From Octopus bimaculoides (taxonomy: Eukaryota), in contig NC_068992.1 of assembly GCF_001194135.2 (NCBI RefSeq), forward strand, positions 44,210,291-44,274,290: a DNA stretch of 64,000 nt. Reading direction: 5' to 3'. Positions 3,361 through 63,260 of this stretch are shown piece by piece. Within the stretch, counting starts at the first letter, position 1; each line of letters starts with the position of its first letter. The notes under the pieces are model-generated. The model made no database searches, was not told the DNA's origin, and saw nothing but the letters and a program-made list of their open reading frames with translations. A program made the translations under genes and the position numbers.

Positions 3361-3404
<44 letters not shown>

Positions 3405-4035: not shown

Positions 4036-4070
<35 letters not shown>

Positions 4071-4527
4071 TACATACATACATTCATACATACGTACGTA
4101 CATACATACATACATACATACAAAAATACCCTGTTGTTCATGTCGAAATTTCACTGAAGGAGCCTTGGATCTAGGTTAGAAACCGACTTTTTTTTTCTAA
4201 AAGTGAATAATGACATACATACATAAATATATCATGCGAGAAGAAATTACAAAAGCAGCACGTAAACGCCAACACCACACAATTCTAACCAAACCCTTTA
4301 TCATACACCTTTATCACACCCTGAACCACTTGCTCTAAAACACTTGTTTCTTCTCAGAAAAATTTTCCTGATCTGACTAGCAAAAGCTAAAATAGCTTCC
4401 TGCTCCTTTTTTGCCTGTGATATCCACGATGTTTCCTATGTGTTCACATCCCTTTGGGATGTCGACCAGAATATGTGTATACAAACTTAAATACATCCAT
4501 GTATACATACATACATACATACATACA

Positions 4528-4563
<36 letters not shown>

Positions 4564-5985: not shown

Positions 5986-6297
5986 GCGTCATTATGTATG
6001 TATGTATGTATGTATGTATGTATGTATGTATGTATGTTATCTACCTAACTGTGTATGTGTGTGTGTAAACATGTATATTGGTATGTGACGAAGCACAATT
6101 CTAGTGTCATCCATGTTTAGTGATGCATACCAACACCTCGATTACCATACTTCACTAAGTGTTTGCTCATATGCTCTACTTTAGTAACTGTTTTGTCAAG
6201 ACTCATCTTTCTACCCCAAAATCAGGAATGTAGAGGTAATTTTGTTAAAGGGGTCAGCGTCTATCAGAGACAGTCATATAATTTCATATACTGACAG

Positions 6298-6426
6298 GAT
6301 CGGTTGATATGTTGTTATCTAAAAGGGGACTCAGAACAGTTGCAAATCGGTATACATATAGACGATCTGTACCATAGCTATGTACAGTGTCTTGGTTTTC
6401 TTGTTTTCTTTCTTTTGAAAGTCCAG
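6298..6426 (+). CDS. Candidate upstream exon supplying a signal-peptide hydrophobic core (tentative)
   Basis: ctgacag| acceptor-like site and CAG|gtaatg donor; 129 nt open in phase 0 ending ...CLGFLVFFLLKVQ, which would join TDGLMEW in frame; no in-frame ATG within it. Confidence 0.3.
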
Positions 6427-9400
6427 GTAATGTGTGCGTTACCTAATAATACTATTTTCTGTATCTTGTATAGGGGCTATCTCTATTTCCAGAATTTTAC
6501 ATTTGGATAATTTCTCCAGTTGTTTTAGAAATACAGTTTTTTATTCTATCATATAACATAGTTATCGTTTCTTCTGCTTATCTTTCCAGTCAACGACAAA
6601 GAAATGCAAACAAATTGAAAGAAAATTCCTCAGTAGATAATTACATTCTTGAAATGTTTGTATCTTATACTAGTCTATAAGTGTGACGAATGTAAATAAA
6701 GCAATAACTATCTATGAAGGTTATTTTGCAGGTTCTTTATAAAGTTTCATCGACCATCCAACATGATACACGCTTAAATCTCGATATTTCTTTCTTAGCT
6801 TAATATTGTTATATATAGAATAATACAGTTAGGATAAAATCCAGCTTTTTATTTATCCATAAATACTTATGGCTATTAAATAAATAGGATGAAACTAGAG
6901 ATCAATTACTATCGCATAGAACCCATCGTCGTTGCATTGTATTTGTAGCAATGACTCAGCCAATTGAGAAACATTTCCATTTTGAAGGTCTTGCTGCCGA
7001 ACAAACGATCACTCTGTGTATAAGATGAAAAGAAACTAAAATAATATAGTCTAAAAAAGACCAATGATATTAAATTGGATCACAAAGTCGATCGAAAGTA
7101 CCCTAAATGCTGCTCAAGAAGATTCTTCATTTACAGAAATTTCTCCGAGGAACGGATAAAGAAAACATAAATTTCACAATTATTGTTAACATCGTATGAG
7201 AAGGAGAGATAATTTCCCGAAATTAAAAAAATTCACGCTTGGATTAACATGATTAGAAGAGATCTACTACTAATGTTTGTTTCAGAGATGGGAGGCGGCT
7301 ATGAACACATTTTGTCCTCGGTTTAGAGACGCCAGTAGAACATAGTCTTAATAGACAAACAGGTTATCAGGCAGACAGAGACAGGCATATAAGTAGATAA
7401 ATTGATATTTGTATGTAAACATGTATACTTTTAGATGTACTCACAAAAGCAAGAGCGCTGAATACATCTAAGAGAGTTTATTTACTGGCTCGAAGCTAAT
7501 AATTCACTCATTGCTACTGCGATTTTCATATTGAAACTGAATATGAAAACTTAGTGAAAATATCTCCATTGAAACAGAATATAATGAAGAAAGTGGAATC
7601 CTGGGTAATATGTTGCCCATCAGTACCAAGAACCAGTTACCTCGATAGTGTAAATTTCAAACCAATTTTCAGTGTGTGGTATGGAAATGACATTAAAATC
7701 TAAATTAATCAATCCTGTGTGTAAAGTAATTATGTCAATTCTTGTCATAAATTCTTACGATAACTCAATAAAATGACATAAAGGTATGTTATGAACATTT
7801 GTCCAAACCAGTATTTTGTTGATATGTGAAGCTGAAAGCGTTTCAGAATCACTAACAAGCCATCAATCATGATACAATAAATAGTAGCACGTCAGTAGAG
7901 GAGTCATAAAGATTTCTATACAAATTATTTAACATGTCTTCGTGAAAAGTTTCGTGTGTATACATACAAAAGGTAACGTGTTTTTTATAAGATTCTAAAC
8001 AAGTACGGTGACTACATATCGAACTAAGAAATTTACTAAGGAACACTTGTCAACTATTTACTCCTGCTTTTTATTATTTTGGGCCATTTTCTGTATTCTT
8101 TCAGAAATATCTTTGTCTCTTCTCCTGTTGTCACAGGAAAAATATCAAGGTTTCTATAAAAGCGTCAACGAGATTTTAAAAATATAGAAAAAAGAAATTG
8201 AGAAATTTTAAAGCTGACGGCCGGTCATTTTGTTTTCTTGGGTTGTACTTTACATACACATTTTTCAGTTGTTTTGAGTCGACTATGAAAATGATATTAT
8301 CAATGGCAATAATAGAAATAAGCGATTAATGACGAAAACTTAAAACTTTTCACAGAAAATAATCTGTATCAGAATTTGCAACTGAAAGATATATCAGTGT
8401 AGTTTGCTCACAAGAAGATTGATAACTTTGTGACCATTTGGAAATACACAAATATCCAGATTAATCTGCTTTAAGATTTAAGAACTAAGAATAACTCTGA
8501 CTGAGGTCAAATCCATAGTTTCTGAAAAATAGCAAGATCGACAATATTAAAAATAACTAACTTAATGGACAAGCAGAACTGCTTGGAGAAACGATACAGA
8601 GGCCTAACCTAAAATCGATTTAGTATCGTTAAGATTCAAACTGATCATGATTGCATACACCATGCATATAGGATCAAATTTATCATCTTCAGTAATAACG
8701 AAAATTTAATAAAAATCTTAATTTCTTAATTGTTTTTGGAAATCAGTCAAAAAGGCTGAAACAAATTATTAATATTAATATTAACATATAATTATTAATA
8801 TTCCTATTATTAACCACTAATTACACAATCATAATCTGTTACCACTTCACTACAGACTTCGCATTTATTGTATTCATTTTAGCCAATATAAAGCGAAGCT
8901 AGTTGCAATACCTAATGGCAATATATCTTGGTGAAATTGTACGGATTTCACTTTGGTATGTGCTAGCTTCAGCAAATAAAGAATTATATACAAAGAAGAT
9001 CTGACATCATCTCATTAGCGTTCGCAGTTCAACACTAAGCCAACTACAATGCAGATTAAAGTTTATTTTCATATTAGTGTGGAACATGACGTGCCACAGT
9101 AATCTTAGTGTTGAGTTTCTAAAGCTGAGAACTTATTTAGTATTTGTTTGGTTATCTAAGTCTTTGAAATAGAAACTAAAACCATTCCTGCTTTGTCAGT
9201 GTTTTGATAAGGTGATGCAATATATTACTTACTCATTCATAAGCACAAGATAATCTAGAATTCCGCAAATTACTGATTTTATGAAGTTGCACGATCTTGT
9301 TTTCAAAACAGCGAGGCTCTTGTCAAAGAAAAAGTAAGCGTCGTCTAGTTTACATTCATCAGACTGCAATCCTGCTTTGGCTAACCGTTGCGGCACTTTT

Positions 9401-12400
9401 AGTACATGTGTTAAATAATAAATAACATTTAAAGAGTTCAAAGCAATTTTATCACTGGTAGCCATCAAACGACTGAAATTAAACTATTTCTTCTTTTACA
9501 CAATCACTAAAAAAAAAAAATAACTATTAAACGAATCTTTGAAGTGGACATAAAGGGTTTTTGTTTCACCAGCTCCTGCATTCAGTTTAAAAGCTAACGA
9601 GTGAATGTAGTAATATTTGTCAACGGATTTCCGGGTAGCGTTTATAGTCCTTAACTTGAATAACATCCAGTTATTTAATTAAGAAGGTAATATCTACAAC
9701 TAATTCCTTGTAATAAATATATACCATACTTTTACTACATTTAGCACTTGATCATGAAAAATCGGTTAAAAAAGGAGACTAATAAACTTTCAGACCTTTC
9801 TCTGGTTATTTTATCATCATGTGAACCACACTACATTACTTAAATAATATATAGACTTTGTTTCGGGTTCATTCCCATTACGTACACTTTGGCCATGTGT
9901 TTTTTTTTCCATAGTCTCAAGTTGACATTTCCCTTATATGTAGACGAAATCTAAGCAATAACACCATTTTGTTTTCCAGAAGTAAACACAGGCTCTCCAC
10001 TGCAGTTTCCCATTATATTCTACCCTGTACTTTTTCTTTTCACTTGGTTCCATGTCTCATCTCTACCGTCTTCAGTTCCTTCAGCTTATCCCCGGACATC
10101 CAAGCAATTCTCTTCAGGGTTCTAAACTAAGACATGTCTTGCCGAACGTCTCGCTGGTCTTTTTAATCTATGACCTATATATCTCCATTTCTGTATGTAA
10201 ATATGCATATACGTGTGTGTGTGTGCAAGCATGTATATGCGTTTATGTATTTGTCCGTGTCTAAGTTTTATGTAAAACACTGTGTTGTGAAAAACAGAGT
10301 GTAACTTGACGATTCAGTAAACATATTCCATAAAACGATGAATATCAGTATAAAATAATAAGTGTAGTCGATGTGAGCAACTACAACCATGAAGACGATG
10401 TTCCAGAATGACCACAAATCGGTGTGTGTATGTGTGTGTGTGTTCGTGCGCGCTGGCGTGCATGTGTGCAGGCGACAGTTTCGGGTAACTTCAGTTGTTT
10501 TCCCAGTTTAACGTTCAGCTCCCAATCTTTTGATACGACATGCAAGTCTCAAAGGGCGAACCTGGTATCTAGCATCGTCACGCGAGCCCTCACAAAACTG
10601 ATACTCTTCATCGTATATTTATATTTGTAAGAAATACGCGTGTATATTTTATATTTTGCATGTCGAAATGTATTAATATATATATATATATTTTAAATTG
10701 AATTTGTGACTATATATGCGTATATTTAAAAAAAAGTTGATTGCCTAATTTGAGCTTTTCTCTTAATTCTTTTATATATGTATATATGTGCATTATATAT
10801 ATATGTGTGTGTGTGTGTGTGCCAAGGAGGTGGAGTTGGGGATATGTAATTTTCCCATCATGGCCGTCACCGCCACCATTGACAACATTGGCATTGCGTG
10901 GGTAGCCAGGTTGCTGAAGCACGTTGTAATGGTGTCAAGTGTCTTCATTTCATGAGAACAACGTTATTCTTTCTTTCTTTTTTTTTGTTATTTTTTTTTT
11001 ACTTTCAACCAATTTCTGATATTTACTTTCCGTATACTGGAAGAGGCTTTATTTCAGTATTTCTCTGTGTATTCGGTTATCAATACGTAAACATATTGTT
11101 GTTGGTGTAAAACAGGTCTTGACCAAGTGGAAGGGTTGCTTAGTAGACGTACAGAATTACATTGAAACAGGATTTAGTGAGTACGATATTTGTCTGGTGT
11201 TAATTTAAATAGCTCTGTCAGACTAAGTGGTTTTAGAAATAGCAGTAGTGAAGTGGAAGACATAGTAATGAAAAGGATAAGGAGATGCCAGTGACTCTAT
11301 GGATTACTTAACATGATTATTACACTTGTAATCTACTTTCTCATTGACACGGCTACCAACATGAACGGTAAATCAAATTTACAACTGTTTGATAACGTAT
11401 CCTTTGTAGGTCACTGACTAGGTTTTGAAAGGGTCGTTTAAATTTCATTATATCATTATACGCTTCATTAGCATTATACAGCCCTTTCTTCACGAGCAAG
11501 CGTGTCAAATAAAATGTAAAACTACGATTTCTTTGCTTTGATACGAGAAAGGAAGAATAAGTTGTGTTGACCTACATATGTTACTAGTATTTTGTTTATT
11601 ATAATATCAAGTGAATAACAATCATGACTAGATGGAATTTAAAACGAATGCAGGGATGATCACTTTAATACACAGCCCCAAAGTTTCTGTGATGTTGATA
11701 TTACGTTTTTGTATCTCCAGTATTAATATTCCTTTTATGTGATAAAAGATATTTGTTCTACTTCTTCAACTGAACTTTACAGGATTGACATATCGGGGAA
11801 AGTAAATTGATACAGAACTGCCAAACTACATTTCTATTACATCTGTGAGTATTCCACAAAAAGTAGTATAATAATCTAAAAGTCTTTTTATTGTCGTCAT
11901 GAAGTGTATGGTTCAGGAACCTACAAGTGACTAAAGCAGCCTGCACGAATGACGACAAAATTTCTAATCTTTGTAGAACAACAACTGGAAGCTATTATTC
12001 TATGTTGTATCATTAAATCAAAGCAATTTTAACTTATTTAAATTCTTACCATTTATACCACTCACTACTGCAACTATGACAGCATCCATTACGTTTTCGG
12101 TGACTTCGCGAAGACGCACAGCCTAGCTACGACTGAAGACTACGAAACGAATACAGGACGCTTCTAACCAACATACAAACCCCAATGTATACTTCCTGCA
12201 TATGGGACAGGACATTAGTTAACACCATAGTTTTTACTATCATATCGTTAAAACACTATTTTCTCTTTCTATATTGTTTCGAAGATTGACAAACTCATGT
12301 TGTTCGTCTTTTCCTTTACGAACATGGAAAGCTTTAGATTAGCATTTCAAGATATAAGAGCAATTAAAACTTCTCATGGTGTCTAGCTATAACTAGGAGA

Positions 12401-13071
12401 AAAGAGCTATAGTTTTTAATCGATTTTGGCAAGATTACAGAGCGGTGATGATGATATAAGCCGTTAACTCATTCGAGGATGCTAGCATGCTAATGACCGA
12501 CTGTTATAGTTACAAATTAAACAAAGAAAATATAACGATTAACATATTTCGAGTTTGTAGGTTGCATAAACTGCATGCTTCACTTACGATGACAGCGAGA
12601 AGAAAAAATTTCGTATTGAGTTGACACTGTCTAAATATAATGTTAAAATCTCTCTAATATGCTTCAAACATGAAAACATTTCAATTAATAAAAACCACAT
12701 GTTTCTTGAAATAATAACAGCAACTATGTCTATATTTATAATGAAGCATGGAGGTAAAAATAAAAACAATGGAGTAACTCAGAGGTACTGATGGTTGCTT
12801 GTGTTTAAGGGTCGGAATGTAGTTTTGAAAGCGGGTGGTCGAATGTAGCGTGAGAACTAACTAAAAGAATGGCGAGAACATGAAATCGTGCTACTATATA
12901 TGTATGTCCATAAATAGCACAAAGGTTCAGATTTATGTGCTCAAGGAAATAAAAGTGTGGCAGCGTTCTGCCGTTCTAAATATAATTAGTAAATCATAGA
13001 AAATACGTAATTAATCAATAATCTAAAACTGCAATGTAAATATATAATATAGGACAATCAGTTAGTTGTCA

Positions 13072-13133
13072 TAATAAAACTCAGAGTTTCGGATGTCGGG
13101 CTGAAGGCTGCTCCGGCATCTTATCAGTTATTA
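13072..13133 (-). ncRNA. Hammerhead-like motif, left arm copy with G8>A core substitution
   Basis: Minus strand: TAATAA CTGATAA GATG...CATCC GAAA CTCTGAGT T TTATTA; stems I and III intact, C3-G8 pair broken. Confidence 0.5.
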
Positions 13134-13418
13134 AGAGAAAAAAGGTATGAAAAAATCGTCGAATAAAGGAAAGCTATTCCTATAGGCATGGGGAAAGTAA
13201 AACTTCGTTCATAGAATATATATATGTTTGTGTGTGTATATATGTACACGTGTATGTGAGTATGTATTTGTATTTATACACGTGTGTATGCGTACGTGTA
13301 TGTATATGTGTGTACATGTGTGCATATGCAGATGCTATGAACGAAGTTTTACTTTCCCCACGCCTATAGGAGTACCTTCCCTTTAATCAACAGTCGTTTT
13401 TTCGTAGCGTTTTTGTCT

Positions 13419-13480
13419 TAATAACTGATGAGATGCCGGAGCAGGCTTCAGCCCGACCTCTGAAACTCTGAGTTTTATTA
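13419..13480 (+). ncRNA. Type I hammerhead ribozyme-like motif (right arm of foldback element)
   Basis: Stem I TAATAA/TTATTA; core CTGATGA 13425-31; imperfect stem II; GAAA 13462-65; palindromic stem III ACTC-T-GAGT; U-U at positions 16.1/17. Confidence 0.6.
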
Positions 13481-15633
13481 TAACATCTAACTGGTTGTCC
13501 TATATTATATTTATAGATAAATTCCTTTATTTACATAATATCGAGGGCTCATTCATTCTTTTGTTGTCATATTATATATATATAAATTCCTAGTTTTATT
13601 TTTACCCAAATGTATATGTTCTAAATTGGAATATATCACCTGAACGTTATATAAAAAGTAATGAGAAAACACAACATGCAAATAAAGAATATGACCCGCT
13701 GACTACCTCCAATGTTCAAATTAATCACAACCGATAGAAGTGTGTCAAAAGACGTGTTGATTTTGAGGGTGTGTTCATTTTTTAGAGAGTAACTTGTCTA
13801 CTTAATTCAACAATGTTTAGTTAGAATAGAACCTTAGACTTATGTCAATAACATTACACTGCAATATTTTATTTATTTTCTCTTTCCTCTTGCATGAATT
13901 CTTTTAAAATGGAAATCTTTTTAGGCTTTGAAATTTTTGTTCACAGGACTCCATTTTAAAAATATATGTATTTCCGAACTTCCTCAGTTGATTTTATCTT
14001 TTCTTTATCTCTGATCATTTTGATTTCCGGTTAGAACACAATGTCAAAGGTTTGTATGTTTGCAGAGATTCTATGATGTTCATCTTTTATGCAAATTGGT
14101 AACTTTTATCATGGGAACTAGTTTCCATCACGCATTGGAAGCGGCTCACTGACTCCAATCTTGCCTCCAGCTACACACTGACGGTTCACCACTAAATATA
14201 AAAAAAATGATTCTAGTTTTCAAAAGACTTAATACCGGTGTTACGATAAAATATATATCTTCCTGTTCTACAAACTCCCTACCATTATCGGTAAATGACA
14301 CGAAGAATGATCAGGTGCTTAATCACGTGACAGTTAGCCATTATATACACACGCTATTTCATGCCATATCTTCTCAATATGTTTTATGTCTAAAAATCCG
14401 AGATTTTACACTTGATATTGAGGTCACATTTATTTCTACCCCTTTTCACGCAGATTTACCTTGGGTAGGTTATCTATAAAATCTATCTTAAAGAAAAATT
14501 CTAAAATTAGGTGAATTGAGTGTTTTTGCTCAAAACAGCGAAATAACAGCATCTATATTTGAACTAAGGATTATTGAGCTAAATTAGATCAATAATTTCT
14601 TTCATCAGTAATTACTCTTGTATAATACTTTCGTTTCCCTTATCTTACAGAAATTCTGTAATTTAATGGTAATCTTGGGCTTATTGCCAACAAGTATAAT
14701 ATTGTTACGTGGATGGGTTCGTCAGTAAGCGAAATACCTGTTGTAAACGTATTATCAATAAATAGAATATTTATCGTGAATCTACATCTATAGTGAGGTT
14801 TATCAGCTGGCGAGAATTTAATATTTTTTGTCAAGGAAAATGCATGCTTCAACGATTAAGCAAATATCTTTGGATATCTGTCAGGATCAAAAACATCTGT
14901 ATTTTGGCATGTTACAACATTTTTACCTATCACCACCTCCTTGTGTGTACTTGTCGATAATCGCTGAAATCTTGAATTTTTATCAAAGAAATATAACTCA
15001 AACAAATATGGTTTAGCTACAACAAAATACCTGACTGCATTAACGTTTTCAATGCTGCTGCTGATGCTACTCTGATCTATTCATGTTTATATTTTTGTTG
15101 AAAATATGCTACCACGATAAAAACTGCACCTCCACCTTCTTAAAGGATCACACACCTCTTAAATGCATAGTCATTGCTGCCAAAATCATTTACGTTTCTT
15201 CTGTGAAGTGGATAGAATATGAAGTAATATAGTATTGACAGTTGTCATTACTTGTTAACGGGAAAAATTAAGCAACAGACCCACAAAAAGAATATGTCAA
15301 TGAATTATGAATTGGAAATAAAATTAAATCCGCTTTATATCTTTTCCATTCAGTAGATTCTGTGTTTGCTATATCTGTTTAAGAAAGTTACACTAATGTG
15401 AAGCACTGAGTTAATTTTCACAAAACTTTCCAGTTTTCCAATCTACATTATTTTCGTTCATGATGTAACACATATTTAAGTTCAAATTCTCTTTATTCGA
15501 TACAGTTAGTACTTGTAATTTACTAGGATCTTTGAATTGTAAAGCATCAATTGTAATCACAAGCCTGCTACATTTGATGATATTCAATTGTTGTTGTATT
15601 ATTGTAAAATAACATTGCTCTTTCATATTCTAG

Positions 15634-15740
15634 ACTGACGGGCTGATGGAGTGGAGTAAATGGTCGCAATGGAGTGAATGCACAAAAACATGTAACCGGG
15701 GAGTTTCTCAGAGGCGAAGGCAATGCAACGAAAATCCTAA
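15634..15740 (+). CDS. Exon of ADAMTS-like (THSD4/ADAMTSL4-6-like) gene: N-terminal part of TSP1 repeat
   Basis: tttcatattctag| acceptor and |gtaagt donor; translates TDGLMEWSKWSQWSECTKTCNRGVSQRRRQCNENP(N) with the WxxWxxWxxCxxxC...RxRxC TSP1 signature; 107 nt, phase 0 to phase 2. Confidence 0.93.
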
Positions 15741-17385: not shown

Positions 17386-17458
17386 TGCTGTAAGATCGAC
17401 ATCGCATTTGGAAAGATGCCCGGGTCACTACAGACAATATATCGTCTGTAATACAGAG
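17386..17458 (+). CDS. Exon of ADAMTS-like gene: C-terminal part of TSP1 repeat
   Basis: Strong pyrimidine tract ...ccactctttgcag| and AG|gtaagt donor; 73 nt, phase 2 to 0, completes the previous exon in frame: (N)AVRSTSHLERCPGHYRQYIVCNTE; CxGxYRQYxxCNT resembles THSD4-type proteins (recalled family motif). Confidence 0.92.
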
Positions 17459-17844: not shown

Positions 17845-19001
17845 ATCATGGATAGATATTTCTGAATATTTGATCAAACAGTTTTGTATAAACTTGATAT
17901 TTCCCTGTCGTTATATTCATTCCTCCAGGGTGTGATGTTAACCCGCAAACATATTTCTCCTCATGTATTCTGAGAAGTGAAAGGGAAATAGATTCAGAAT
18001 ATTTTCTGAGAAGATGCACTTTCAAGTCATTTTCAAAATTGCAGCATAATTTTAGCAAACATTATATAATAAATAACAGAATTCCTTTAGTGATTAACTG
18101 GCACCGAAATTTCGCTGGCATTTCAAAAGTGTTGCATGAGAGTTACCAGCATGTGACGAAAAAATATCCTCGTTTCAAACAGATATTTCTTCAGCCTCCT
18201 ATTGTAGCCTTCAGACGGAATAAGAATATAAGAGAATTATTGACCTCCATTTTTGACTCCAAGAAAACGAACAATGGAGTATCTGCACGCTGTACATTGA
18301 AAAAGAGTGGTAAGCCCTGTTCATTGTGCAACAACATGAGTTAAGTGAATTCCATCAAGAATCATAACAGAAATGTTATGATTTATTTATACAAAAGGTG
18401 GGACATGTAGAGATTCCCATTTGGTGTACGCGGCAGAATGCTCGAAATACAGCTTGATTTATGTTGGTTGTACAACAGAACAATTAAACAAAAGGCTTAA
18501 TGGGCACAGATTCGACGTCAGGCACAACAACAATAGTTCGACAGAACTTGTCAAACATTTCGTTTCATATGGTTACAATTTTGAAAAAGACTTAAAAGTG
18601 CATATTCTCAGAAAATATTCTGAATCTACTTCACGTTCACTTCTCAGAGGGAAAATATGTTTGCGGGTTATTAACATCACGCCCTGGAGGAATGAATAAA
18701 ATGACAGGAGAATATCATCAAATTTATACAAAACTGATTAAATATTCTTCTTTTTCTCTTTTTTCTTTCCTCTTTTTTTTCTGTCTCTTTCTTTTCGCCT
18801 GTTATAAAATTGGAACTTAAAGACTTGATGATGTCATTCCATCAATGTGTGCACGCTGGTTGCTCTTGTTCTTTACATTTAAATTTCTGTAATTTTGAAT
18901 TTTTATCACTTCTTATTTTGAACTTGACAAAGACAGACTTACTGCCGAAATATCGTTCAACCAATAAAATATCTATTACAATCGAATCGCGCTCTTCATC
19001 T

Positions 19002-19003
<2 letters not shown>
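17845..19003 (+). mobile_element. 5'-truncated Penelope-like retroelement (GIY-YIG endonuclease end) with inverted partial terminal repeat
   Basis: ORFs 18039-18344 and 18421-18699: PPIVAFRRNKNIRELL, Cys cluster, VYAAEC...YVGCT...RLNGHR GIY-YIG motif, LTSxPGGMN terminus; 17845-18045 is an inverted copy of ~18571-18745; hammerhead and (AAT)n follow. Confidence 0.88.
18918..18960 (+). ncRNA. Minimal Penelope-type hammerhead with U3-A8 core variant
   Basis: TTGAAC/GTTCAA 6-bp stem I; core TTGACAA; extra A; stem II GACAG-ACTTA-CTGCC (one A-C mismatch); GAAA; palindromic ATAT helix III; predicted cleavage after C18954; lies 3' of a GIY-YIG ORF. Confidence 0.75.
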
Positions 19004-19093
<90 letters not shown>

Positions 19094-19114
19094 TATAATT
19101 ATAATTATAATAAT

Positions 19115-19193
<79 letters not shown>

Positions 19194-19200
19194 GTAATAA
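19004..19200. repeat. (AAT)n microsatellite, centrally interrupted by TATAAT units
   Basis: Direct inspection. Confidence 0.98.
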
Positions 19201-19400
19201 GAGAGTATTGCAGTTCGCTTGAAACATTGTGTATTGTTTGTAAAGAATAAAAAGTTTTGAATGGTATAACAATGCACTATAATACAAAAAACTGGACTAT
19301 ATACTTGTTGTAATTTTGTTATCTATAGTCCGATGATATTTCGGAATACAATTCCTTCTTCAGATCTTCTTAGATGGAGTCTCTGGCAGAAATATGCTTT
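19201..19400 (-). mobile_element. 3' end of a second Penelope-like element, opposite orientation
   Basis: Minus-strand hammerhead followed by ~130 nt of unique sequence running into the same AAT/TTA tract; no ORF seen. Confidence 0.5.
19332..19366 (-). ncRNA. Minimal hammerhead with intact core
   Basis: Minus strand: GAT CTGAAGA A GGAAT-TGT-ATTCC GAAA TATC ATC; perfect 5-bp stem II, ATAT palindromic helix III, 3-bp stem I. Confidence 0.7.
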
Positions 19401-20519: not shown

Positions 20520-21109
20520 NNNNNNNNNNNNNNNNNNNNNNNNNNNNNNNNNNNNNNNNNNNNNNNNNNNNNNNNNNNNNNNNNNNNNNNNNNNNNNNNN
20601 NNNNNNNNNNNNNNNNNNNNNNNNNNNNNNNNNNNNNNNNNNNNNNNNNNNNNNNNNNNNNNNNNNNNNNNNNNNNNNNNNNNNNNNNNNNNNNNNNNNN
20701 NNNNNNNNNNNNNNNNNNNNNNNNNNNNNNNNNNNNNNNNNNNNNNNNNNNNNNNNNNNNNNNNNNNNNNNNNNNNNNNNNNNNNNNNNNNNNNNNNNNN
20801 NNNNNNNNNNNNNNNNNNNNNNNNNNNNNNNNNNNNNNNNNNNNNNNNNNNNNNNNNNNNNNNNNNNNNNNNNNNNNNNNNNNNNNNNNNNNNNNNNNNN
20901 NNNNNNNNNNNNNNNNNNNNNNNNNNNNNNNNNNNNNNNNNNNNNNNNNNNNNNNNNNNNNNNNNNNNNNNNNNNNNNNNNNNNNNNNNNNNNNNNNNNN
21001 NNNNNNNNNNNNNNNNNNNNNNNNNNNNNNNNNNNNNNNNNNNNNNNNNNNNNNNNNNNNNNNNNNNNNNNNNNNNNNNNNNNNNNNNNNNNNNNNNNNN
21101 NNNNNNNNN
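20520..21109. other. Assembly gap (N)
   Basis: Run of N after a (TG)n tract. Confidence 1.
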
Positions 21110-22172: not shown

Positions 22173-22398
22173 NNNNNNNNNNNNNNNNNNNNNNNNNNNN
22201 NNNNNNNNNNNNNNNNNNNNNNNNNNNNNNNNNNNNNNNNNNNNNNNNNNNNNNNNNNNNNNNNNNNNNNNNNNNNNNNNNNNNNNNNNNNNNNNNNNNN
22301 NNNNNNNNNNNNNNNNNNNNNNNNNNNNNNNNNNNNNNNNNNNNNNNNNNNNNNNNNNNNNNNNNNNNNNNNNNNNNNNNNNNNNNNNNNNNNNNNNN
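22173..22398. other. Assembly gap (N)
   Basis: Run of N after a (TACA)n(TA)n tract. Confidence 1.
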
Positions 22399-32486: not shown

Positions 32487-32505
32487 NNNNNNNNNNNNNN
32501 NNNNN
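32487..32505. other. Assembly gap (N)
   Basis: Short N run between (CT)n and (TG)n. Confidence 1.
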
Positions 32506-32506
32506 N

Positions 32507-37808: not shown

Positions 37809-37911
37809 AAATGTCCGACTCCAGAACCGGATTACCGAAAAGAGCAATGTGACAAGTTTAATAAACGGAGATTTGCTGGGAAAAGTTATATATGGAAATC
37901 CTTTATTGACC
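37809..37911 (+). CDS. Exon of ADAMTS-like gene: end of TSR and start of Cys-rich module
   Basis: ttgtattttgccag| acceptor, |gtaagt donor; 103 nt, phase 0 to 1; KCPTPEPDYRKEQCDKFNKRRFAGKSYIWKSFID matches the ADAMTS CP...(F/Y)RxxQC..(F/Y)N...F.G..Y.W pattern. Confidence 0.93.
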
Positions 37912-39857: not shown

Positions 39858-40056
39858 TGATCGTTTCAAATCATGGCACAGAACTTGCAATATCAGGGGA
39901 AGAGGTAAGCCGATTATATCGACCTCTGTGAGCAACTGGTATTTATTTTATCGACCCCGATTTAATGAAAGGCAGCCTCGGTTTCAGCAGAATTTGAACT
40001 CAGAATGTAAAGACAGAGGAAATGCCTCTAAGCATTTTGTTCGGTGTGCTAACAAT
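39858..40056 (-). mobile_element. SINE family A copy
   Basis: Reverse complement of family A (AATTTGAACTCAGAATGTAAAGACAG; CTGGTATTTATTTTATCGACCCC). Confidence 0.8.
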
Positions 40057-40759
40057 TGAAATATATTTAATAAAAACCTTCATTTATGATAGTATGTGAG
40101 TGTGTGTGTGTGTGTGTGTCTTTAGCTGGTGTACCATTAGGGTGTCTACCGTGGCATTTTTACCTTTGAGACACAGAAGAAATGTGTCGTCAGTATTTTT
40201 CATTATATTTTAAAGTCCTTTGTTGTACAGTTAAAGAATTTACTGGATCGGACATAAAATATTGGTTTGTCGATAAAATACTTAAAATCTCATTTAGCCA
40301 AGTGAATTCTATTTTTTCTTCTTTCTCTTTTTTTTCTTTATTTTTTAATCTCAGTCAGTACAACAGGAAATTCGAAATACACTTAAAAGATCAGAGCCTG
40401 TGAAGTTTTATTAGTTTTCTCTGCCAAACCACGTAGAGACAGAAAACAGCAAACAGTATGAAAGAGCTGAGGTTACGATTGGCTTTATATCTATAATCTA
40501 AAGTTACCGTCAGTTGTGAGTTAAATACAATTGATGTGGCTACTGTGAACACTACGTTGGTAGTTGAACCTGTTTAGAGGAGAAGTTTTAATTAAATTTA
40601 TGGTTTCATATGTCTTAAAATATTTGTACTTTGTCAAGAAAATGATTTGACCGTGAGAAATTTGACATTGAGTATTATTTTAGTGCATGTCATACTTAAG
40701 TCAATGTCTCTCTTTGTATTGGTGCCGAAAAAAGTATGGCATTTGATATTTGATTTGGA

Positions 40760-40886: not shown

Positions 40887-41658
40887 TATGTTGTTAATTA
40901 GAAGTATACCAAGAAGTGATTATTGCAGTATAGATGTGTATTATTATGCTAAATGCGCTTGGGAATATCCAAATGTAGAAAGACCTTTATTGCTAAAACT
41001 GTCTCCGGAGACAAATTCTCCTTAGAGAATGTGCAAAAAAACACACCACTGGGCCGTAAATGATATAGTAGTTCCATATTCTACATACAGAGAGTGAAGT
41101 GTATTTCTTTAGGTCTGTCATTTTTTTTCTGTCAGTATCAAACAGCCATGATTACCTTTCAATAAATGCATCTGGAACTATTGTTGCCCATAAAAAATTC
41201 TTTTTGTTGTGGTTTTTTGTTACTCATTTATATCACGAAAATTTATAGTAATTTAATTCAAATTCCAAATTTAATTTAATTTGAATAAGTGACATCATTG
41301 GATAAGGAAGTAGGACATAGGAAATGTTCAGTTTGCTATTTCTGCTATCGTTTGCAGCATGCACTTGAATATCTTTCGTACTTTGTTTCTGGGTGATTGC
41401 TTGTACTTAAATGAATTCAGCTTAACCACCTTATTCCTCATTATAATTCCTACATTATATGGCAGTAAAGTTAATATGGAAATAGTATTCTAGAAATGCC
41501 AGTGAATATGCTGAATCCTGTCAAATGGATTTTTTGGTTGCTGACATCTTCAGCAGGTTTTATAATAAAAGTAAAATATTTTAAGTGGATAATAACAAAC
41601 AATTTATTTGTATATAGTGAAACGTCTTTCTCTAATTTTTCTATTCCTGTTTTTATAG

Positions 41659-41789
41659 CTCGAGATAGGTGCACAATTTCTTGTCGACCAGTTGGATTCA
41701 GTTTTTATGCCCGAATTGTAAGTGGTGTTCCCGATGGAAGCATCTGTTACCCAACATCAGATCATATTTGTGTAAATGGTCTCTGCAAG
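41659..41789 (+). CDS. Exon of ADAMTS-like gene: Cys-rich module
   Basis: ttcctgtttttatag| acceptor, AG|gtaaga donor; 131 nt, phase 1 to 0; (P)RDRCTISCRPVGFSFYARIVSGVPDGSICYPTSDHICVNGLCK matches the ADAMTS C.L.C...G..F.......V.DG..C......ICV.G.C pattern. Confidence 0.94.
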
Positions 41790-43423
41790 GTAAGAACTAA
41801 TTCACATTTAAAAATCTATCTTATTGTACAGAACAATTGCAGTTACAAACTTTATCTTAACAAAAAGCTTTCTCTTTCATGAAGTTTTGCATAATGGAAG
41901 TAACATAGAGGCAGGTGTGTTTGACCAGTCGTGCGTGTCAAATGACAAAGCCAATTCTTTGAGATGTTCGTTCCTTTTGTTGTTTATTCCTAACTTAATC
42001 CAATTGCAATAACATTAACCATCATCTATCCAAATATACCTATGTCAATGAATATATCATCTAATGTATCCATCTGTTTCTAGTGGGTGATCAAGTGTGT
42101 TTAGATTGCCTCAAAATTGTCGTTCTTTTTCTACTGGTCTACTTTTTAAATGTCAGCTGGTCACCTAAACATAAAATATATAGCAATATTTCTATCTGAT
42201 CCCCACCACTGCTTCCCAATAAGCTTGGTTTGATTACTCTACCGTAACTTAGTGGTTTGGCAAAGAGTAACCGAACGCATAAGTACCAGATTTAGAAAAT
42301 ACAAATAAGTACAGGGGTCGATTCGTTCGACTAAAATTCTTCAAAACGTTGCCCCAGTATCACACACACATACACATTCGCGTTTATGTATTTGTTTTGC
42401 AAGATTCCTGATGTGAGTAGCTGAAGTGGTCACAGGTGTGTAACGAAAGATTTCCAGACAATGGACATAAAATAACAACAATAATAAACAAGTGAAGAAC
42501 GAATATATAGTGTGTGTGTTTATTTAGCAAGAAACCATAAATGACCAGCCCGAAATATAGCAAGATTGAGTTAATGATTTATTGAAAATTACAACCAGAA
42601 TTTTGGTAAGAATATCCTTTCAGATGTAATATCTCTCCCAACATCAATAAGGCCAGACATCAACATCCTGTTATAGGTTCTCATAATCTAGAATTGATTC
42701 CTGCAAGAATTATTTCAATGAAGATTGGCAGACTGCCCAGTTTTATATAATCTGATAATTTTAGCATTTTGGATCAACAGCAAGGTGTGTCTTTAGATAA
42801 CCATTCCTTTATGGTATTGCATTCTATTTAAAGACTCTTATCTTCTGTCTCATTTGAAAGAACTGTACTCTCCCCCCCCCACTCTCTCTTTCTCTCTCTC
42901 TCTCTCTTTCTCTCTTTCTCTGAGTATTTGGTTTCTGTGTACGTGTGTGTCACAGATTATATCACTTTATGCTCAGGTTAAAGCAGTTATTACAGTTCCT
43001 GTTGATATCTCCAGTCTGCAATGTTTAACATTCCATATATTTGGCAACATTTCTGGAGCACTCATCTTACCTTCATTCTTGTGACACTAATTATTCTTTT
43101 ACCTGAATAAAGTAGACAGTATTTTTAATGTTCACTGTATTTTCCATATTCAATTCAAACAACTTCATTTTCAAATATTGGCCTCATTATATTTCACATT
43201 TAATTATGATAAATATCTTCATAAGCTACACTTAATAGTTGTTCTTAGCTCTAGCATTAGTAATATTAAGACGATACTATGTAAATCTAGTTACAACACT
43301 GGATTTTACATGCAACATTCTCAGAAAGTTTGGTTCTAATCTGTAATCATATCCCTCAGGCATAGGAAATTATAGCAATCCCAGACGACAAAATTACATG
43401 TAACATAAATAATCAACTAATAT

Positions 43424-51594: not shown

Positions 51595-51885
51595 TAAGTG
51601 TAATCGACTATCCCCTTTACCCCGAAAATTTCAGGCCTTGAGCCCAAAGTAGAAAGGATCATTACAATTAATATGGGTGCTGTACAGAATCGCTAGCTCG
51701 CCAGGCAAAATACTTAGCGGCATTTCGTCTGTCTTCGCGTTCCGAGTTCAAATTCCACTGAGGTCGACTTTACCTTTCATCCTTTCCAAGTCGATTAAAT
51801 AAGTAGCAGCTAAGAACTGACATTGGCGTAATCGATTAACGATTCCCCTTAAAATTGCTGGCCTTGTGCTAAAATTAGAAAGAGC
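51595..51885 (+). mobile_element. SINE family A: tail fragment plus full copy
   Basis: AATCGACT...AATTTCAGGCCTTG tail, then CCAGGCAAAATACTTAGCGGCATTTCGTCTGTC...GAGTTCAAATTCC...GCTGGCCTTGTGCTAAAA. Confidence 0.85.
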
Positions 51886-52029
51886 TATTGCTATATTTCC
51901 TATACTTTCTGTTATAATTTTCTTTTCTGACATACGCACGAGATCTGAAATTTTGTGGGAGGAATTGAAACGTGTATTGTTTAACGAAAGTAACTTTTTT
52001 TGTTCAGGCGTGTGACAAGTTCCTTCTCT

Positions 52030-52232
52030 ATCGCCACTACTACCACCACCACCACTACCGCTACTACTACCTCAACTACTATTATCGTTACCACCACCAC
52101 CACCACAACCACCACCACCACCACCACCATCACCGCCACCACAACCACCACCACCACCACCATCACCGCCACCATCACCACCACCATCACCACCACCACC
52201 ACTATCACACACTACTACTACTACTACTAGTA
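52030..52232. repeat. (ACC)n/(ACT)n degenerate trinucleotide repeat
   Basis: Direct inspection. Confidence 0.95.
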
Positions 52233-52918
52233 CTGTTGTACTGCTGCTCCGTACATTATCGTCAACAGTGTGTGTGTGTGTGTGTGTGTGTGCGCGTGTG
52301 CGTGCGTGTATTTATTGTTGCTGTCACTCTGAGTACCATCCGGCCCGTGGCCGCCTGCTTGTGGAATTAGACGACACATTGCACCCAGCGTCACCCAAAT
52401 AAACCACGTTGTTTAGATACAAAGTGTTTGGTGGTCAGGTACAGTCTATAGCGGGTGGGTGGTATACATACATACATTTCATAATTAAATAGATATATAA
52501 TATATATATAGATAGATAGACATACACACGCACATTTGCATACGTACATGTATGTATGTATGTATGTATGTATGTATTGCGTTATATGTTTATATACCGG
52601 CACTTTTCGGTCTCTTCCTTTCTCTACATAAACACACACGCAGACGACACTGACACCAACGTGAAGAAAGTAGGAGTTCATTTCTCTCTCACTCACTCCC
52701 CCTCTCTCTCTCTCCCTCCCTCGCTCTCTCTCCCTCTCTTTCTCTCATCTCTCTGCTAATTCGTGTGATTCAAACAAACATTTGGAAGAGGAAGAGTCGG
52801 AGAGGGTAGGAAGAGGCTTGGACAATGATATTTCCCGCTTTATAATTCTTCCAAAACACAGCTCTCATCTGTTCTCTCTGTATCCACAAACAGTACACAA
52901 TTATTCAAACACATAGAT

Positions 52919-52984
52919 ATGGAGTTCAATACTGGTTTGCAGCTCTCTAATATTTTTCTTTTATTGTTTCTTACATATTTTCAG
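52919..52984 (+). CDS. Candidate alternative first coding exon (signal-peptide-like) or recursive splice site
   Basis: ATG at 52919, 22 codons MEFNTGLQLSNIFLLLFLTYFQ, perfect CAG|GTAAGT donor in phase 0; the same bases also read as branch point plus pyrimidine tract plus AG. Confidence 0.35.
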
Positions 52985-53128
52985 GTAAGTTGACTTTTTA
53001 CTTATATTCCATCGTTCTTTTCTTTTTTACTTGTAATTTATATTTTTTCATACAATTACACACAAATACATCACACATGCACATACATCACACACACATA
53101 CATCACACACACACATACAAACACAACA

Positions 53129-53164
<36 letters not shown>

Positions 53165-53292
53165 GTGTGTGTCTGTCTGTCTGTCTATGTATGTATGTAT
53201 GTATGTACGTATACATACATACATGTATGTGCGTATGTATGTATGTATGTATGTATGTATGTATGTATGTATATGTATGTATTCTACACACA

Positions 53293-53575
53293 NNNNNNNN
53301 NNNNNNNNNNNNNNNNNNNNNNNNNNNNNNNNNNNNNNNNNNNNNNNNNNNNNNNNNNNNNNNNNNNNNNNNNNNNNNNNNNNNNNNNNNNNNNNNNNNN
53401 NNNNNNNNNNNNNNNNNNNNNNNNNNNNNNNNNNNNNNNNNNNNNNNNNNNNNNNNNNNNNNNNNNNNNNNNNNNNNNNNNNNNNNNNNNNNNNNNNNNN
53501 NNNNNNNNNNNNNNNNNNNNNNNNNNNNNNNNNNNNNNNNNNNNNNNNNNNNNNNNNNNNNNNNNNNNNNNNNNN
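53293..53575. other. Assembly gap (N)
   Basis: Run of N after a TG/TATG tract. Confidence 1.
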
Positions 53576-53679: not shown

Positions 53680-54090
53680 GGTTTCTAACTTCGGTCTGTC
53701 GTATTCTGAGTTCAAATTCCTCCCAAGTCTCAGTTTCTCTGCCACCCTACAGAATCGTTAGCACGGACGAAATGCTTAGCGGTATTTCAGCCGTCTTTAT
53801 GTTCTGAGTTCAAATTCCGCCTAGATCAACTTTGCCTTTCGTTCTCACGGGAGTCGACAAAAGACTTATCATTAAGGCGGCGAGCTGGCAGAATCGTTAG
53901 CACGCTGGACGAAATACTTAGTGGTATTTCGCCCGTTGCTACGTTCTGAATTGAAATTCCGCCGAGGTCGACTTTGTCTTTCATCTTTTCGAGGTCAATA
54001 AATTAAGTACCAGTGATACACTAGGGTCGATGTGATCGACTAGTCATCTCCTCCCAAATTTCAGGCCTTGTCCCTTGAGTAGAAAGGATT
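53680..54090 (+). mobile_element. Head-to-tail cluster of three SINE family A copies
   Basis: TTCTGA(G/A)TT(C/G)AAATTCC occurs three times; third copy complete (GGCGAGCTGGCAGAATCGTTAGCACG...TTTCAGGCCTTGT). Confidence 0.88.
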
Positions 54091-54524: not shown

Positions 54525-54800
54525 TTAACTAACGCCCCCACCTCTCAAATTTTCTGGCCTTGTGCATAATCAATTTCAATTAGAATTATTATTGTTTAGG
54601 GCAATGAAAGGCGGTCAGCACGCCGGGCAAAATGTTTAGCGATATTTGAACTTCTGCGTTCAAATTCCGCTAAGGTCGACTTTGTCTTTCATCCTTTCGG
54701 AGTCGATAAAATAAGTACCAGTTGAGCACTGGGGTCGACGTAATCGACAAACTCCTTCCCCCAAAATTGCTGGCCTTGTGCCAAAATCTGAAACCATTAA
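54525..54800 (+). mobile_element. SINE family A: tail fragment plus full copy
   Basis: AATTTTCTGGCCTTGTGC tail, then CAGCACGCCGGGCAAAATG...GGCCTTGTGCCAAAATCTGAAACC. Confidence 0.85.
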
Positions 54801-62455: not shown

Positions 62456-63260
62456 CAAGGGTGGGATGGAAAGTTCATAGGCTGGCTATGAAGGAGTGAT
62501 GCTAGAGCTGTGAAATCTTGTACGTATTCATTTCAACTACATTGTTCCTTTTCAAGTAAACTGACATCTGATTGTTCAAAGAAGCCTCTAAAAGTGACAA
62601 GGAGCGACTTCTCTTGAAAAATTGACAAATTTGGGCATCGTGGTGTTATCAAATACCTTCAGAAAAACGGTTCAGCCTCCAACGACATTCATGCTGACAT
62701 GGTTGCTACATTAAGGAATGATGCTTCAGCTTTATCAAAAGTACAAATGTGGGCAACTGAATTTAGGAGGGAAAGGGAGAGTTTTGAAGATGATCCCAGT
62801 TCTGGATCTCCTGCAACTATCACCATCGTGGAAAACATTGTGTCCACCACATGGTGATGGATGACAGGTGATTTACTATAAATCAAATAGCCAATGCTAT
62901 TAGCATATCCCACGAGGGAATTGAGAATATTCTGCACAAGGGATTTGGTATGACAAAGGATTCTTCTCGGTGGGTGCCACGTCTTCTGGCACCTGATCAA
63001 AAGCGCACCAGGTCGGTCACATTGTGGGAAAAATCTGACGATCCAGTTGGTTTCCTTGAACACTTACGAACCCACTTTGAGCCAGAGACAAAGAGATGAC
63101 TTGATTACTTTTCTGAACAACAAGACGAAAGCTTTTTCACCAATGGGATATCCAAGCACTGCAACATTGATGGGATAAGTGCGTGGACTACAAGGGGGTA
63201 CTATGTTGGAAAATAAACCTCATTTGGTCACATTCCATGAGAGTATCTTGGTCAGCCTCG
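62456..63260 (+). mobile_element. Mariner element with catalytic domain deleted
   Basis: TA-flanked; HRGVIKYLQKNG...WATEFRRERESFEDDPSSG, RWVPRLLAPDQKRTR (WVPHEL-like), then a jump to QQDESFFTNGI...WDKCVDYKG; right TIR internally shortened. Confidence 0.9.

What the first reader, a model, noticed from the sequence alone, without database searches (positions are those of the whole stretch)
52900..52990. CAG|GTAAGT junction deep in a >22-kb intron: alternative signal-peptide exon or recursive splice site
Seen: ATG-initiated 22 codons (MEFNTGLQLSNIFLLLFLTYFQ) ending at a perfect phase-0 donor, downstream of CT/GA-rich sequence, in the intron after the ...CVNGLCK exon (also phase 0). The same bases read as branch point (CTCTAAT ~52945-51), pyrimidine tract and CAG immediately followed by GTAAGT. 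From recall, to be verified: vertebrate THSD4 has a short ADAMTSL6-beta isoform whose own signal-peptide first exon sits in the equivalent intron. Established: AG|GT ratchet points subdivide long Drosophila introns. Inference: this is either a deeply conserved or convergent short-isoform promoter, or a molluscan recursive splice site; both would be notable.
Basis: partly seen in the sequence, partly recalled or inferred. Interest (0 to 1): 0.7.

Follow-up and report, generated by a model that had tools for sequence, protein, structure and literature searches.

The report
Back-to-back splice signals inside long intron
Deep inside a long intron of an ADAMTS-like matrix-protein gene, a good splice acceptor sits directly against a perfect splice donor; this looks like a "recursive" splice site of the fly type, but without RNA or cross-species data it may be a chance motif, and reading it as a signal-peptide exon is weak.

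Summary
ATG 52919 opens 22 codons (MEFNTGLQLSNIFLLLFLTYFQ) that end at CAG|GTAAGT (52982-52990). The same bases read as a CTCTAAT branch site, a tract of 25/30 pyrimidines and an AG-free zone. The site lies 11,195 nt into the intron after the ...CVNGLCK exon, and that intron is at least 22.2 kb long.

The 9-mer alone is not unusual (0.61 expected per window). The full acceptor-plus-donor juxtaposition is rare, about 0.02-0.04 expected per strand, and it is the best-scoring such site on either strand.

The signal-peptide reading is ordinary. Seven ATG-initiated hydrophobic ORFs abut GTRAGT in the window, three of them antisense. A pyrimidine tract translates to Phe/Leu by necessity, and the peptide has no basic n-region. 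The THSD4 "equivalent intron" recall is not supported: the human isoforms differ by 360 residues.

No orthologous DNA or transcript could be retrieved, so conservation and usage remain untested.

- Recursive (zero-length-exon) splice site: about 0.38
- Chance, unused motif: about 0.32
- Alternative first exon: about 0.12
- Other U1-binding or cryptic-exon roles: about 0.18

Interest is modest until RNA data exist.

The parts
41659..41789 (+). Upstream coding exon (exon D) of the host ADAMTS/ADAMTSL-type gene. It encodes ...RDRCTISCRPVGFSFYARIVSGVPDGSICYPTSDHICVNGLCK and ends in phase 0.
   Evidence: Read directly. Joined with exons 15634-15740, 17386-17458 and 37809-37911 it gives a TSP_1 domain (Pfam). 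The joined peptide aligns over residues 6-137 with ADAMTS13 TSR1 plus Cys-rich region. The exon peptide is 100% conserved in a related species' contig, L001, whose flanking intron is about 80% identical.
41790..41795 (+). 5' splice site of the long intron (AAG|GTAAGA). It would pair with the 52984 acceptor in the first recursive step.
   Evidence: donor PWM 6.5 bits.
52945..52951 (+). Branch-point-like CTCTAAT (yUnAy match CTAAT), 34 nt upstream of the AG. The real exon D acceptor uses the same heptamer.
52953..52981 (+). Pyrimidine tract. 15/20 pyrimidines lie immediately before the AG, and no AG occurs for 40 nt.
   Evidence: The real acceptors of this gene have 14-17/20. Only 7 of 334 AGGT sites in the window reach 15/20.
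52982..52990 (+). CAG|GTAAGT: acceptor AG juxtaposed to a donor with the full 9-nt consensus. This is the proposed ratchet point; the junction is between 52984 and 52985.
   Evidence: It is the only CAGGTAAGT in the window and the top combined acceptor+donor score of all AG|GT sites on both strands (acceptor 3.8, donor 8.8 bits).
52919..52984 (+). ATG-initiated 22-codon ORF MEFNTGLQLSNIFLLLFLTYFQ in phase 0 (the alternative-first-exon reading). It overlaps the branch site and pyrimidine tract.
   Evidence: The stop-free frame is 52829-52990, and read-through gives VS*. Base rate: 7 comparable ORFs in the window, 3 of them antisense.
52841..52847 (+). TATAATT, 72-78 nt upstream of the ATG. This is the only promoter-like element seen, and it is weak evidence in 65% A+T DNA.
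   Evidence: Read directly. No CpG enrichment: 3 CpG and o/e 0.25 in 52801-53200.
53033..53038 (+). Weak GTAATT (CTT|GTAATT) 48 nt downstream of the junction. It is the only candidate donor for a cryptic RS-exon (52985-53032).
   Evidence: Read directly. It was not among the GT sites scoring above 0 bits, where no donor above 1.5 bits occurs within 300 nt. My hand calculation gives about -2 bits.

Best explanation
The bases 52945-52990 are a ratchet-point-type recursive splice site, that is, a 'zero-length exon', in the sense strand of a long intron (at least 22.2 kb) of an ADAMTS/ADAMTSL-family gene. The proposed mechanism is inferred, not shown. As the intron is transcribed, the exon D donor (41789|41790) is spliced to the acceptor at 52984, using the CTAAT branch site near 52949 and the pyrimidine tract. 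This removes an 11,195-nt lariat. The junction recreates a strong donor (AAG|GTAAGTTG), which is then spliced to the true acceptor beyond the window. The mature mRNA carries no trace of the step. On this reading the 22-codon 'signal peptide' is a by-product of translating a T-rich acceptor tract. Shown here: the motif, its rarity, its strand and its intron context. Inferred: that the spliceosome uses it.
For: The tandem motif is complete: branch-site match, 15/20 pyrimidines, a 40-nt AG-free zone, CAG, then GTAAGT. It is within the range of this gene's four real acceptors (14-17/20) and stronger than all four real donors (8.8 versus 1.6-7.9 bits). It is the top-scoring juxtaposed AG|GT site on either strand. 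Its expected chance frequency is about 0.02-0.04 per strand per 64 kb. Both non-exonic AG|GTAAGT sites with a tract of at least 15/20 lie on the sense strand (1258 and 52984), and none on the antisense strand. The first segment would be 11.2 kb, inside the 9-15 kb 'bite size' of fly recursive segments (PMC6110457). The consensus given for fly RP sites is (y)nncag|gtaagt, and such sites are enriched in large introns of all five invertebrates examined, including sea urchin, but not in vertebrates (PMC2773006). There is no competing strong donor downstream, and read-through hits a stop after two codons, so the regenerated donor would win and nothing would be added to the mRNA. The core 52760-53055 is unique in the window and not part of a repeat.
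Against: There is no transcript, lariat or conservation evidence of any kind, because every route to orthologous sequence came back empty. At relaxed thresholds there is no sense/antisense excess of juxtaposed sites in this window (7 versus 5 and 2 versus 2), so enrichment rests on one or two sites. The thresholds were chosen after seeing the site. The acceptor PWM (3.8 bits) is lower than three of the four real acceptors. Fly ratchet points are accompanied by a cryptic RS-exon with a usable downstream donor (PMC8605326); here only CTT|GTAATT at +48 is available. Recursive splicing has not been described in cephalopods or molluscs in the held literature. By extrapolation from the per-window rate, a genome of gigabase size would hold on the order of a thousand such motifs by chance (my arithmetic; the genome size is assumed, not measured).
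Confidence: 0.38

Rival explanations
1. This is a chance juxtaposition with no use. A perfect donor 9-mer happens to follow one of the many T-rich tracts of an AT-rich intron, and the spliceosome ignores it or uses it only as noise.
For: The 9-mer alone is expected 0.61 times per window. 4-7% of CAG sites have an equally good tract. Extrapolated to a whole genome, hundreds to thousands of chance copies are expected (my arithmetic). No excess of weaker juxtaposed sites is seen on the sense strand. There is no usable downstream donor for exon definition. The site sits between microsatellites, CT/GA low-complexity DNA and SINE-like repeats, which is fast-evolving sequence. The first-stage reader would flag any such motif, so selection across many windows applies.
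Against: The expected count for a site this good is only about 0.02-0.04 per strand per window. It lies on the sense strand, at a fly-like distance into a long intron, and resembles the gene's own acceptors down to the CTCTAAT heptamer. A strong acceptor transcribed more than 11 kb before the real one would be hard for the spliceosome to ignore (inference).
Confidence: 0.32
2. This is an alternative first coding exon. A promoter near 52.8 kb yields a transcript that starts translation at ATG 52919. The 22 residues supply the n- and h-regions of a signal peptide, and the exon is spliced from 52984 in phase 0 to the next exon. The result is a short secreted isoform that lacks TSR1 and the first part of the Cys-rich module.
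For: The ATG has a purine at -3 and a G at +4 (GATATGG). The frame is open, and phase 0 matches the phase of the preceding exon. The hydrophobic core is IFLLLFLTYF. Given a pyrimidine tract plus AG, only 6 of 230 sites (2.6%) carry a phase-0 ATG ORF this hydrophobic. TATAATT lies 72-78 nt upstream. Alternate-promoter short isoforms exist in the family: THSD4 isoform 2 / ADAMTSL6-beta. The break after CVNGLC corresponds to the point before the GCD...CGVC unit of ADAMTS13, whose cysteines pair among themselves. That last statement is from my recall of the ADAMTS13 structure; only the alignment extent comes.
Against: ATG-initiated hydrophobic ORFs abutting GTRAGT occur 7 times in the window, 3 of them on the antisense strand, and 2 are in phase 0. 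The Phe/Leu run is what any frame of a T-rich tract encodes. The n-region has Glu and no Lys/Arg (net -1), which is atypical for signal peptides. There is no CpG or other promoter signature. No protein with this N-terminus exists among 5.8 billion clusters or 1.84 billion representatives, although the same databases also lack transcripts of exons A-D, so this is weak. The vertebrate precedent is not in the equivalent intron (a 360-residue difference).
Confidence: 0.12
3. Only one half of the motif works. Either the site is an intronic U1 snRNP binding site (for example, protecting the long intron from premature cleavage and polyadenylation), or it is the donor of an occasional cryptic or poison cassette exon such as 52894-52984, 52862-52984 or 52943-52984.
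For: 9 of 9 consensus positions will bind U1 whatever else happens (established base-pairing rule). In-frame, stop-free internal exons of 123 nt and 42 nt, and a 91-nt frameshifting one, can be drawn.
Against: All upstream acceptors that could open such an exon are poor (at most 0.8 bits, most strongly negative). A 14- or 41-residue hydrophobic insert inside a disulfide-rich module is implausible. The U1-only idea does not explain the adjacent acceptor features.
Confidence: 0.18

Closest known systems
Drosophila intronic ratchet points / zero-nucleotide recursive splice sites (Ubx, kuz, Bx, Ten-m; Hatton 1998, Burnette 2005, Duff 2015, Pai 2018, Joseph 2018/2021)
   Same: The tandem (Y)nNCAG|GTAAGT motif, the sense strand of a long intron, a first segment of about 11 kb (fly segments are typically 9-15 kb), a regenerated donor stronger than any nearby donor, and read-through that would be out of use (a stop after 2 codons).
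   Different: No conservation, saw-tooth or intermediate data exist. The cryptic RS-exon donor expected about 50 nt downstream is very weak here. The pyrimidine tract is interrupted by five purines, and the host intron is repeat- and microsatellite-rich, unlike fly long introns.
Vertebrate recursive splicing through RS-exons (Sibley 2015; Blazquez 2018)
   Same: An AG|GT junction that regenerates a donor after the first splicing step, in a long intron of a repeat-rich genome.
   Different: Vertebrate sites depend on exon definition of an RS-exon with its own donor, and many are expressed exons. No such exon is definable here.
THSD4 isoform 2 / ADAMTSL6-beta (alternate promoter, distinct N-terminus)
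   Same: The same protein superfamily (TSR1 plus Cys-rich N-terminus in the long form), and the idea of an internal promoter giving a shorter secreted form.
   Different: The human short form lacks 360 residues (658 versus 1018 aa; PMC8559271), so it starts well downstream of the position of this intron, which is at about residue 170-190 of a long form. Orthology of this gene to THSD4 was not established. The candidate signal peptide lacks a basic n-region.
Pseudo-exon 'zero-length exon' in rat tropomyosin (Grellscheid and Smith 2006, as cited in PMC2773006)
   Same: An acceptor immediately followed by a donor inside an intron.
   Different: That case is a regulatory decoy in a short context. 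Nothing here indicates such regulation.

Membership tests
Ratchet-point (zero-nt) recursive splice site | Tandem acceptor|donor motif (Y)nNCAG|GTAAGT | tested here: met
   CTAAT at -34, 15/20 pyrimidines, 40-nt AG-free zone, CAG|GTAAGT. Top combined score in the window.
Ratchet-point (zero-nt) recursive splice site | Lies on the sense strand within a long intron and divides it into multi-kb segments | tested here: met
   The site is on the + strand, like exons A-D. It is 11,195 nt from exon D, and no next exon appears in the remaining 11,016 nt. The total intron length is unknown (at least 22.2 kb).
Ratchet-point (zero-nt) recursive splice site | Cryptic RS-exon (about 50 nt) closed by a weaker but usable downstream donor | tested here: inconclusive
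   Only CTT|GTAATT at +48 (below 0 bits). No donor above 1.5 bits occurs within 300 nt. An assembly gap starts at 53293.
Ratchet-point (zero-nt) recursive splice site | Strong cross-species conservation of the SA|SD motif relative to flanking intron | not testable with these tools
   Six-frame protein searches of the region found no related contig. The only related contig recovered covers exon D (L001).
Ratchet-point (zero-nt) recursive splice site | Recursive intermediates: exon|RP junction reads, saw-tooth intronic coverage, segment lariats | not testable with these tools
   No RNA data are accessible.
Alternative first coding exon with signal peptide (ADAMTSL6-beta-like) | ATG-initiated open frame ending at a donor in the phase required by the downstream exon | tested here: met
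   52919-52984, phase 0, the same as the end of exon D. The base rate is high.
Alternative first coding exon with signal peptide (ADAMTSL6-beta-like) | Tripartite signal peptide (basic n-region, hydrophobic h-region, c-region with a cleavage site) | tested here: inconclusive
   The h-region IFLLLFLTYF is present. The n-region MEFNTGLQLSN has net charge -1 and no K/R. The c-region would lie in the unseen next exon. No SignalP was available, so this is a heuristic reading only.
Alternative first coding exon with signal peptide (ADAMTSL6-beta-like) | Promoter/TSS, and a transcript or protein carrying this N-terminus | tested here: inconclusive
   The only signals are TATAATT at 52841 and no CpG enrichment. 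No protein with this N-terminus is in either database, but those databases also lack transcript-derived products of exons A-D.
Alternative first coding exon with signal peptide (ADAMTSL6-beta-like) | Position equivalent to the vertebrate THSD4 alternative first exon | tested here: not met
   Human isoforms are 1018 and 658 aa (PMC8559271). This intron follows about residue 138 counted from the TSR1 start, about 170-190 of a full-length form.
ADAMTS/ADAMTSL superfamily (host gene) | TSR1 followed by the ADAMTS-type Cys-rich module | tested here: met
   Pfam TSP_1, E=5e-8. Residues 6-137 align to ADAMTS13 TSR1 plus Cys-rich (E=3e-10). Whether a protease domain lies upstream (ADAMTS versus ADAMTSL) and whether the gene is a THSD4 orthologue were not determined.

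The most novel reading that the evidence does not exclude
Long introns of a lophotrochozoan (cephalopod-type) genome are removed stepwise by fly-type zero-length-exon recursive splicing, and 52984|52985 is such a ratchet point. That would extend recursive splicing at intronic ratchet points beyond insects and vertebrates and argue for a bilaterian-ancestral mechanism.
Probability: 0.35. Interest if true: 0.5.

Novelty: new member of a known kind. Interest (0 to 1): 0.3.

Why it matters
If the site is used, it would be a first concrete candidate for recursive splicing in a mollusc-type genome with very long, repeat-rich introns. Such genomes resemble vertebrates in intron architecture but may share the invertebrate enrichment of ratchet points. 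It would also give an easily testable locus, with one RT-PCR for the 41789|52985 intermediate. If it is a chance motif, it is a useful warning: in AT-rich introns, a polypyrimidine tract read as protein looks like a signal peptide, so 'ATG + hydrophobic run + GTAAGT' should not be annotated as an alternative first exon without transcript evidence. Either way the mature mRNA and the protein are unaffected, so the biological stakes of this single site are modest.

Tried and rejected
1. Orthologous DNA or transcripts. A search with the exon A-D peptide found only one genomic contig of a relative that covers exon D. A concatenated six-frame query of 52760-53060 found nothing in the 5.8-billion-cluster database, and only a spurious low-complexity hit among 1.84 billion representatives. 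A third search on the two sibling sites (around 1258 and 6426) also found nothing. Conservation therefore could not be tested.

2. Repeat origin. The core 52760-53055 has no other copy in the window, so it is not a transposon-borne splice site. Only the flanking microsatellites and CT tracts recur.

3. Known RNA genes. There are no Rfam families or tRNAs anywhere in the window.

4. Internal cassette exon ending at 52984. All upstream acceptors are poor, so this was rejected as the main reading.

5. RS-exon with a downstream donor. None is usable.

6. Site 1258 as the gene's true signal-peptide exon. It is phase 2, and its phase-0 reading ends in TAG, which is incompatible with the phase-0 start of exon A. 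A scan of 1-15633 found no convincing phase-0 signal-peptide exon. The 5' end of the gene is unresolved.

8. The primary ADAMTSL6 papers (Tsutsui 2010, Saito 2011) and Duff 2015 are not held. Secondary sources were used.

9. The run accession of the related contig is not mentioned in any held paper, so the taxon was not identified.

Full report
**Observation**

The sequence is exactly as described.
- ATG is at 52919-52921, and the 22 codons MEFNTGLQLSNIFLLLFLTYFQ end at 52984.
- CAG (52982-52984) is followed at once by GTAAGT (52985-52990).
- Read as RNA-processing signals, the same bases give CTCTAAT at 52945-52951 and 25 pyrimidines in the 30 nt before the AG.
- No AG occurs for 40 nt upstream.
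- CT-rich and GA-rich low-complexity DNA lies upstream. Microsatellites and an assembly gap (53293-53575) lie downstream.

**Host gene**

On the + strand I mapped four exons: 15634-15740, 17386-17458, 37809-37911 and 41659-41789. Joined, they encode a 138-residue peptide with a Pfam TSP_1 domain. Residues 6-137 of this peptide align with ADAMTS13 TSR1 plus Cys-rich region. The last exon ends ...CVNGLCK in phase 0 with donor AAG|GTAAGA.

The expected continuation (GCD...CGxC) is not found on the + strand downstream. The intron is therefore at least 22.2 kb, and the site lies 11,195 nt into it.

Three things could not be settled: whether the gene is an ADAMTSL or an ADAMTS protease, whether it is a THSD4 orthologue, and which animal it comes from. 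A related species' genomic contig (L001) shows exon D 100% conserved at the protein level and about 80% nucleotide identity in the flanking intron.

**Is it more than chance?**

The 9-mer alone is not. One copy is seen, 0.61 are expected on both strands, and 46 of 100 shuffles contain at least one.

The full juxtaposition is rare.
- Of 334 AG|GT sites on both strands, 7 have at least 15/20 pyrimidines upstream.
- AG|GTAAGT occurs three times, all on the sense strand. One is the real exon B donor. The other two (1258 and 52984) both carry such a tract.
- Markov simulations expect 0.03-0.04 such sites per strand.
- An independent estimate gives about 0.02: roughly 0.3 expected 9-mers per strand times the 4-7% of CAG sites with a tract at least as good.
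- With a simple position-weight score, the site is the best juxtaposed acceptor|donor on either strand (acceptor 3.8 bits, donor 8.8 bits). The gene's real acceptors score 0-7.5 and its real donors 1.6-7.9.

Three cautions apply. The thresholds were set after seeing the site. At relaxed thresholds there is no sense-strand excess (7 versus 5 and 2 versus 2). Extrapolated to a gigabase genome, about a thousand chance copies are expected.

**The signal-peptide reading**

ATG-initiated hydrophobic ORFs of 12-80 codons abutting GTRAGT occur seven times in the window. Three are on the antisense strand and two are in phase 0. Among 230 pyrimidine-tract+AG sites, 34 end a phase-0 ATG ORF, and 6 of those are as hydrophobic. 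A T-rich acceptor tract translates to Phe/Leu/Ile in any frame, so 'hydrophobic core' and 'pyrimidine tract' are one observation, not two.

Other points against this reading:
- The n-region (MEFNTGLQLSN) is acidic and lacks Lys/Arg.
- There is no CpG enrichment.
- The only promoter-like element is a TATAATT 72-78 nt upstream.
- No protein with this N-terminus exists in either large database. This is weak evidence, because the databases also lack transcript-derived products of the upstream exons.

Points in favour:
- The Kozak context is good.
- The phase is right.
- The 2.6% conditional rate of so hydrophobic an in-phase ORF is a real, if post hoc, coincidence.

The recalled precedent is half right. 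THSD4 does have an alternate-promoter short isoform with a distinct N-terminus (PMC8559271; ADAMTSL6 alpha/beta of 145/95 kDa, PMC10850197). But 1018 versus 658 residues places its start far downstream of the point equivalent to this intron.

**The recursive reading**

Fly ratchet points are defined as tandem acceptor|donor pairs, (y)nncag|gtaagt, in long introns (PMC2773006; PMC8605326). They cut introns into segments of about 9-15 kb and occur in most introns over 40 kb (PMC6110457). [quoted passage not shown]

The present site matches the motif, the strand, the long-intron context and the segment length. After a first step (41789 joined to 52985) the regenerated donor would be AAG|GTAAGTTG. 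No donor above 1.5 bits lies within 300 nt, and read-through gives VS-stop. A second step from the regenerated donor would therefore leave no trace in the mRNA.

One feature is missing: a usable downstream donor to define the cryptic RS-exon that fly and vertebrate sites rely on. Only CTT|GTAATT at +48 is present. Internal-exon readings that end at 52984 have poor acceptors. The core sequence is unique in the window and matches no known RNA family. Recursive splicing is not described for cephalopods or molluscs in the held literature.

**Weighing**

I compared rough rates per intron for each hypothesis. These use prior times probability of the observed features, and the numbers are judgement, not measurement.

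| Reading | Probability |
|---|---|
| Recursive (zero-length-exon) splice site | 0.38 |
| Unused chance motif | 0.32 |
| Other one-sided roles (U1 binding, occasional cryptic exon) | 0.18 |
| Alternative first exon | 0.12 |

The ranking is sensitive to the unknown prior that this lineage uses ratchet points at all. One RT-PCR or a genome-wide sense/antisense count would settle most of it.

**Verdict**

The feature is real and correctly described. The recursive-site interpretation is the best-supported functional reading but is unproven. The signal-peptide-exon interpretation is mostly a composition effect, and its vertebrate analogy does not hold positionally. If confirmed, it would be a new member of a known kind in a new phylum. 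As it stands it is a moderately interesting, cheaply testable candidate.

Noticed in passing
window 1194-1264 (+): A second sense-strand juxtaposed site: ...CTGCTATTATTCTGTCTGCTAG|GTAAGT (junction 1258|1259, 15/20 pyrimidines). It is preceded by the ATG-initiated MLLLLTLGYINQSITAIILSA (1194-1258, phase 2). The phase-0 reading ends in TAG, and phase 2 does not join exon A in frame. It may be a 5' exon of this or another gene, a second ratchet-like site, or chance.
   Followed up: partly
window 6404-6432 (+): A weaker juxtaposed site, TTTTCTTTCTTTTGAAAGTCCAG|GTAATG (acceptor 4.8, donor 4.2 bits), on the sense strand upstream of exon A.
   Followed up: no
window 455-634, 39946-40057 (-), 51683-51809, 53750-53862, 53883-54060, 54624-54748: An interspersed repeat family of about 100-180 bp (72-82% identity between copies), SINE-like. 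Three copies flank the finding within 2 kb.
   Followed up: partly
window 18382-18696 (+): An ORF with a GIY-YIG nuclease domain (Pfam E=5.6e-5) inside the intron between exons B and C. It is probably a Penelope-like retroelement fragment. The adjacent ORF 17898-18341 has no Pfam hit.
   Followed up: partly
window 62618-63096 (+): Two ORFs that look to me like a mariner/Tc1 transposase N-terminus (…KYLQKNGSASNDIHADMVATL…), but neither has a Pfam hit at E<=0.01.
   Followed up: partly
window 18990-19230 and 52000-52400: Long trinucleotide low-complexity runs: (AAT/ATT)n of about 230 nt, and a CAC/CAT/CCA-rich stretch that reads as poly-His, poly-Pro or poly-Thr in the three frames. TG, TATG and CT microsatellites are abundant throughout. 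Four assembly gaps lie at 20520-21109, 22173-22398, 32487-32506 and 53293-53575.
   Followed up: no
whole window: GTAAGT occurs 16 times on the sense strand (3 are real donors and 1 is inside exon D) versus 21 times on the antisense strand. This mild deficit of intronic sense-strand donor hexamers makes the perfect 9-mer at 52982 stand out a little more. The numbers are too small to test.
   Followed up: no
L001 487-1707 versus window 40891-42134: A related species' short-read contig (Logan, run SRR11869391) aligns at 80% identity over 1.28 kb, with exon D identical at the protein level. This is a useful yardstick for neutral intronic divergence if the orthologous site can be obtained.
   Followed up: yes
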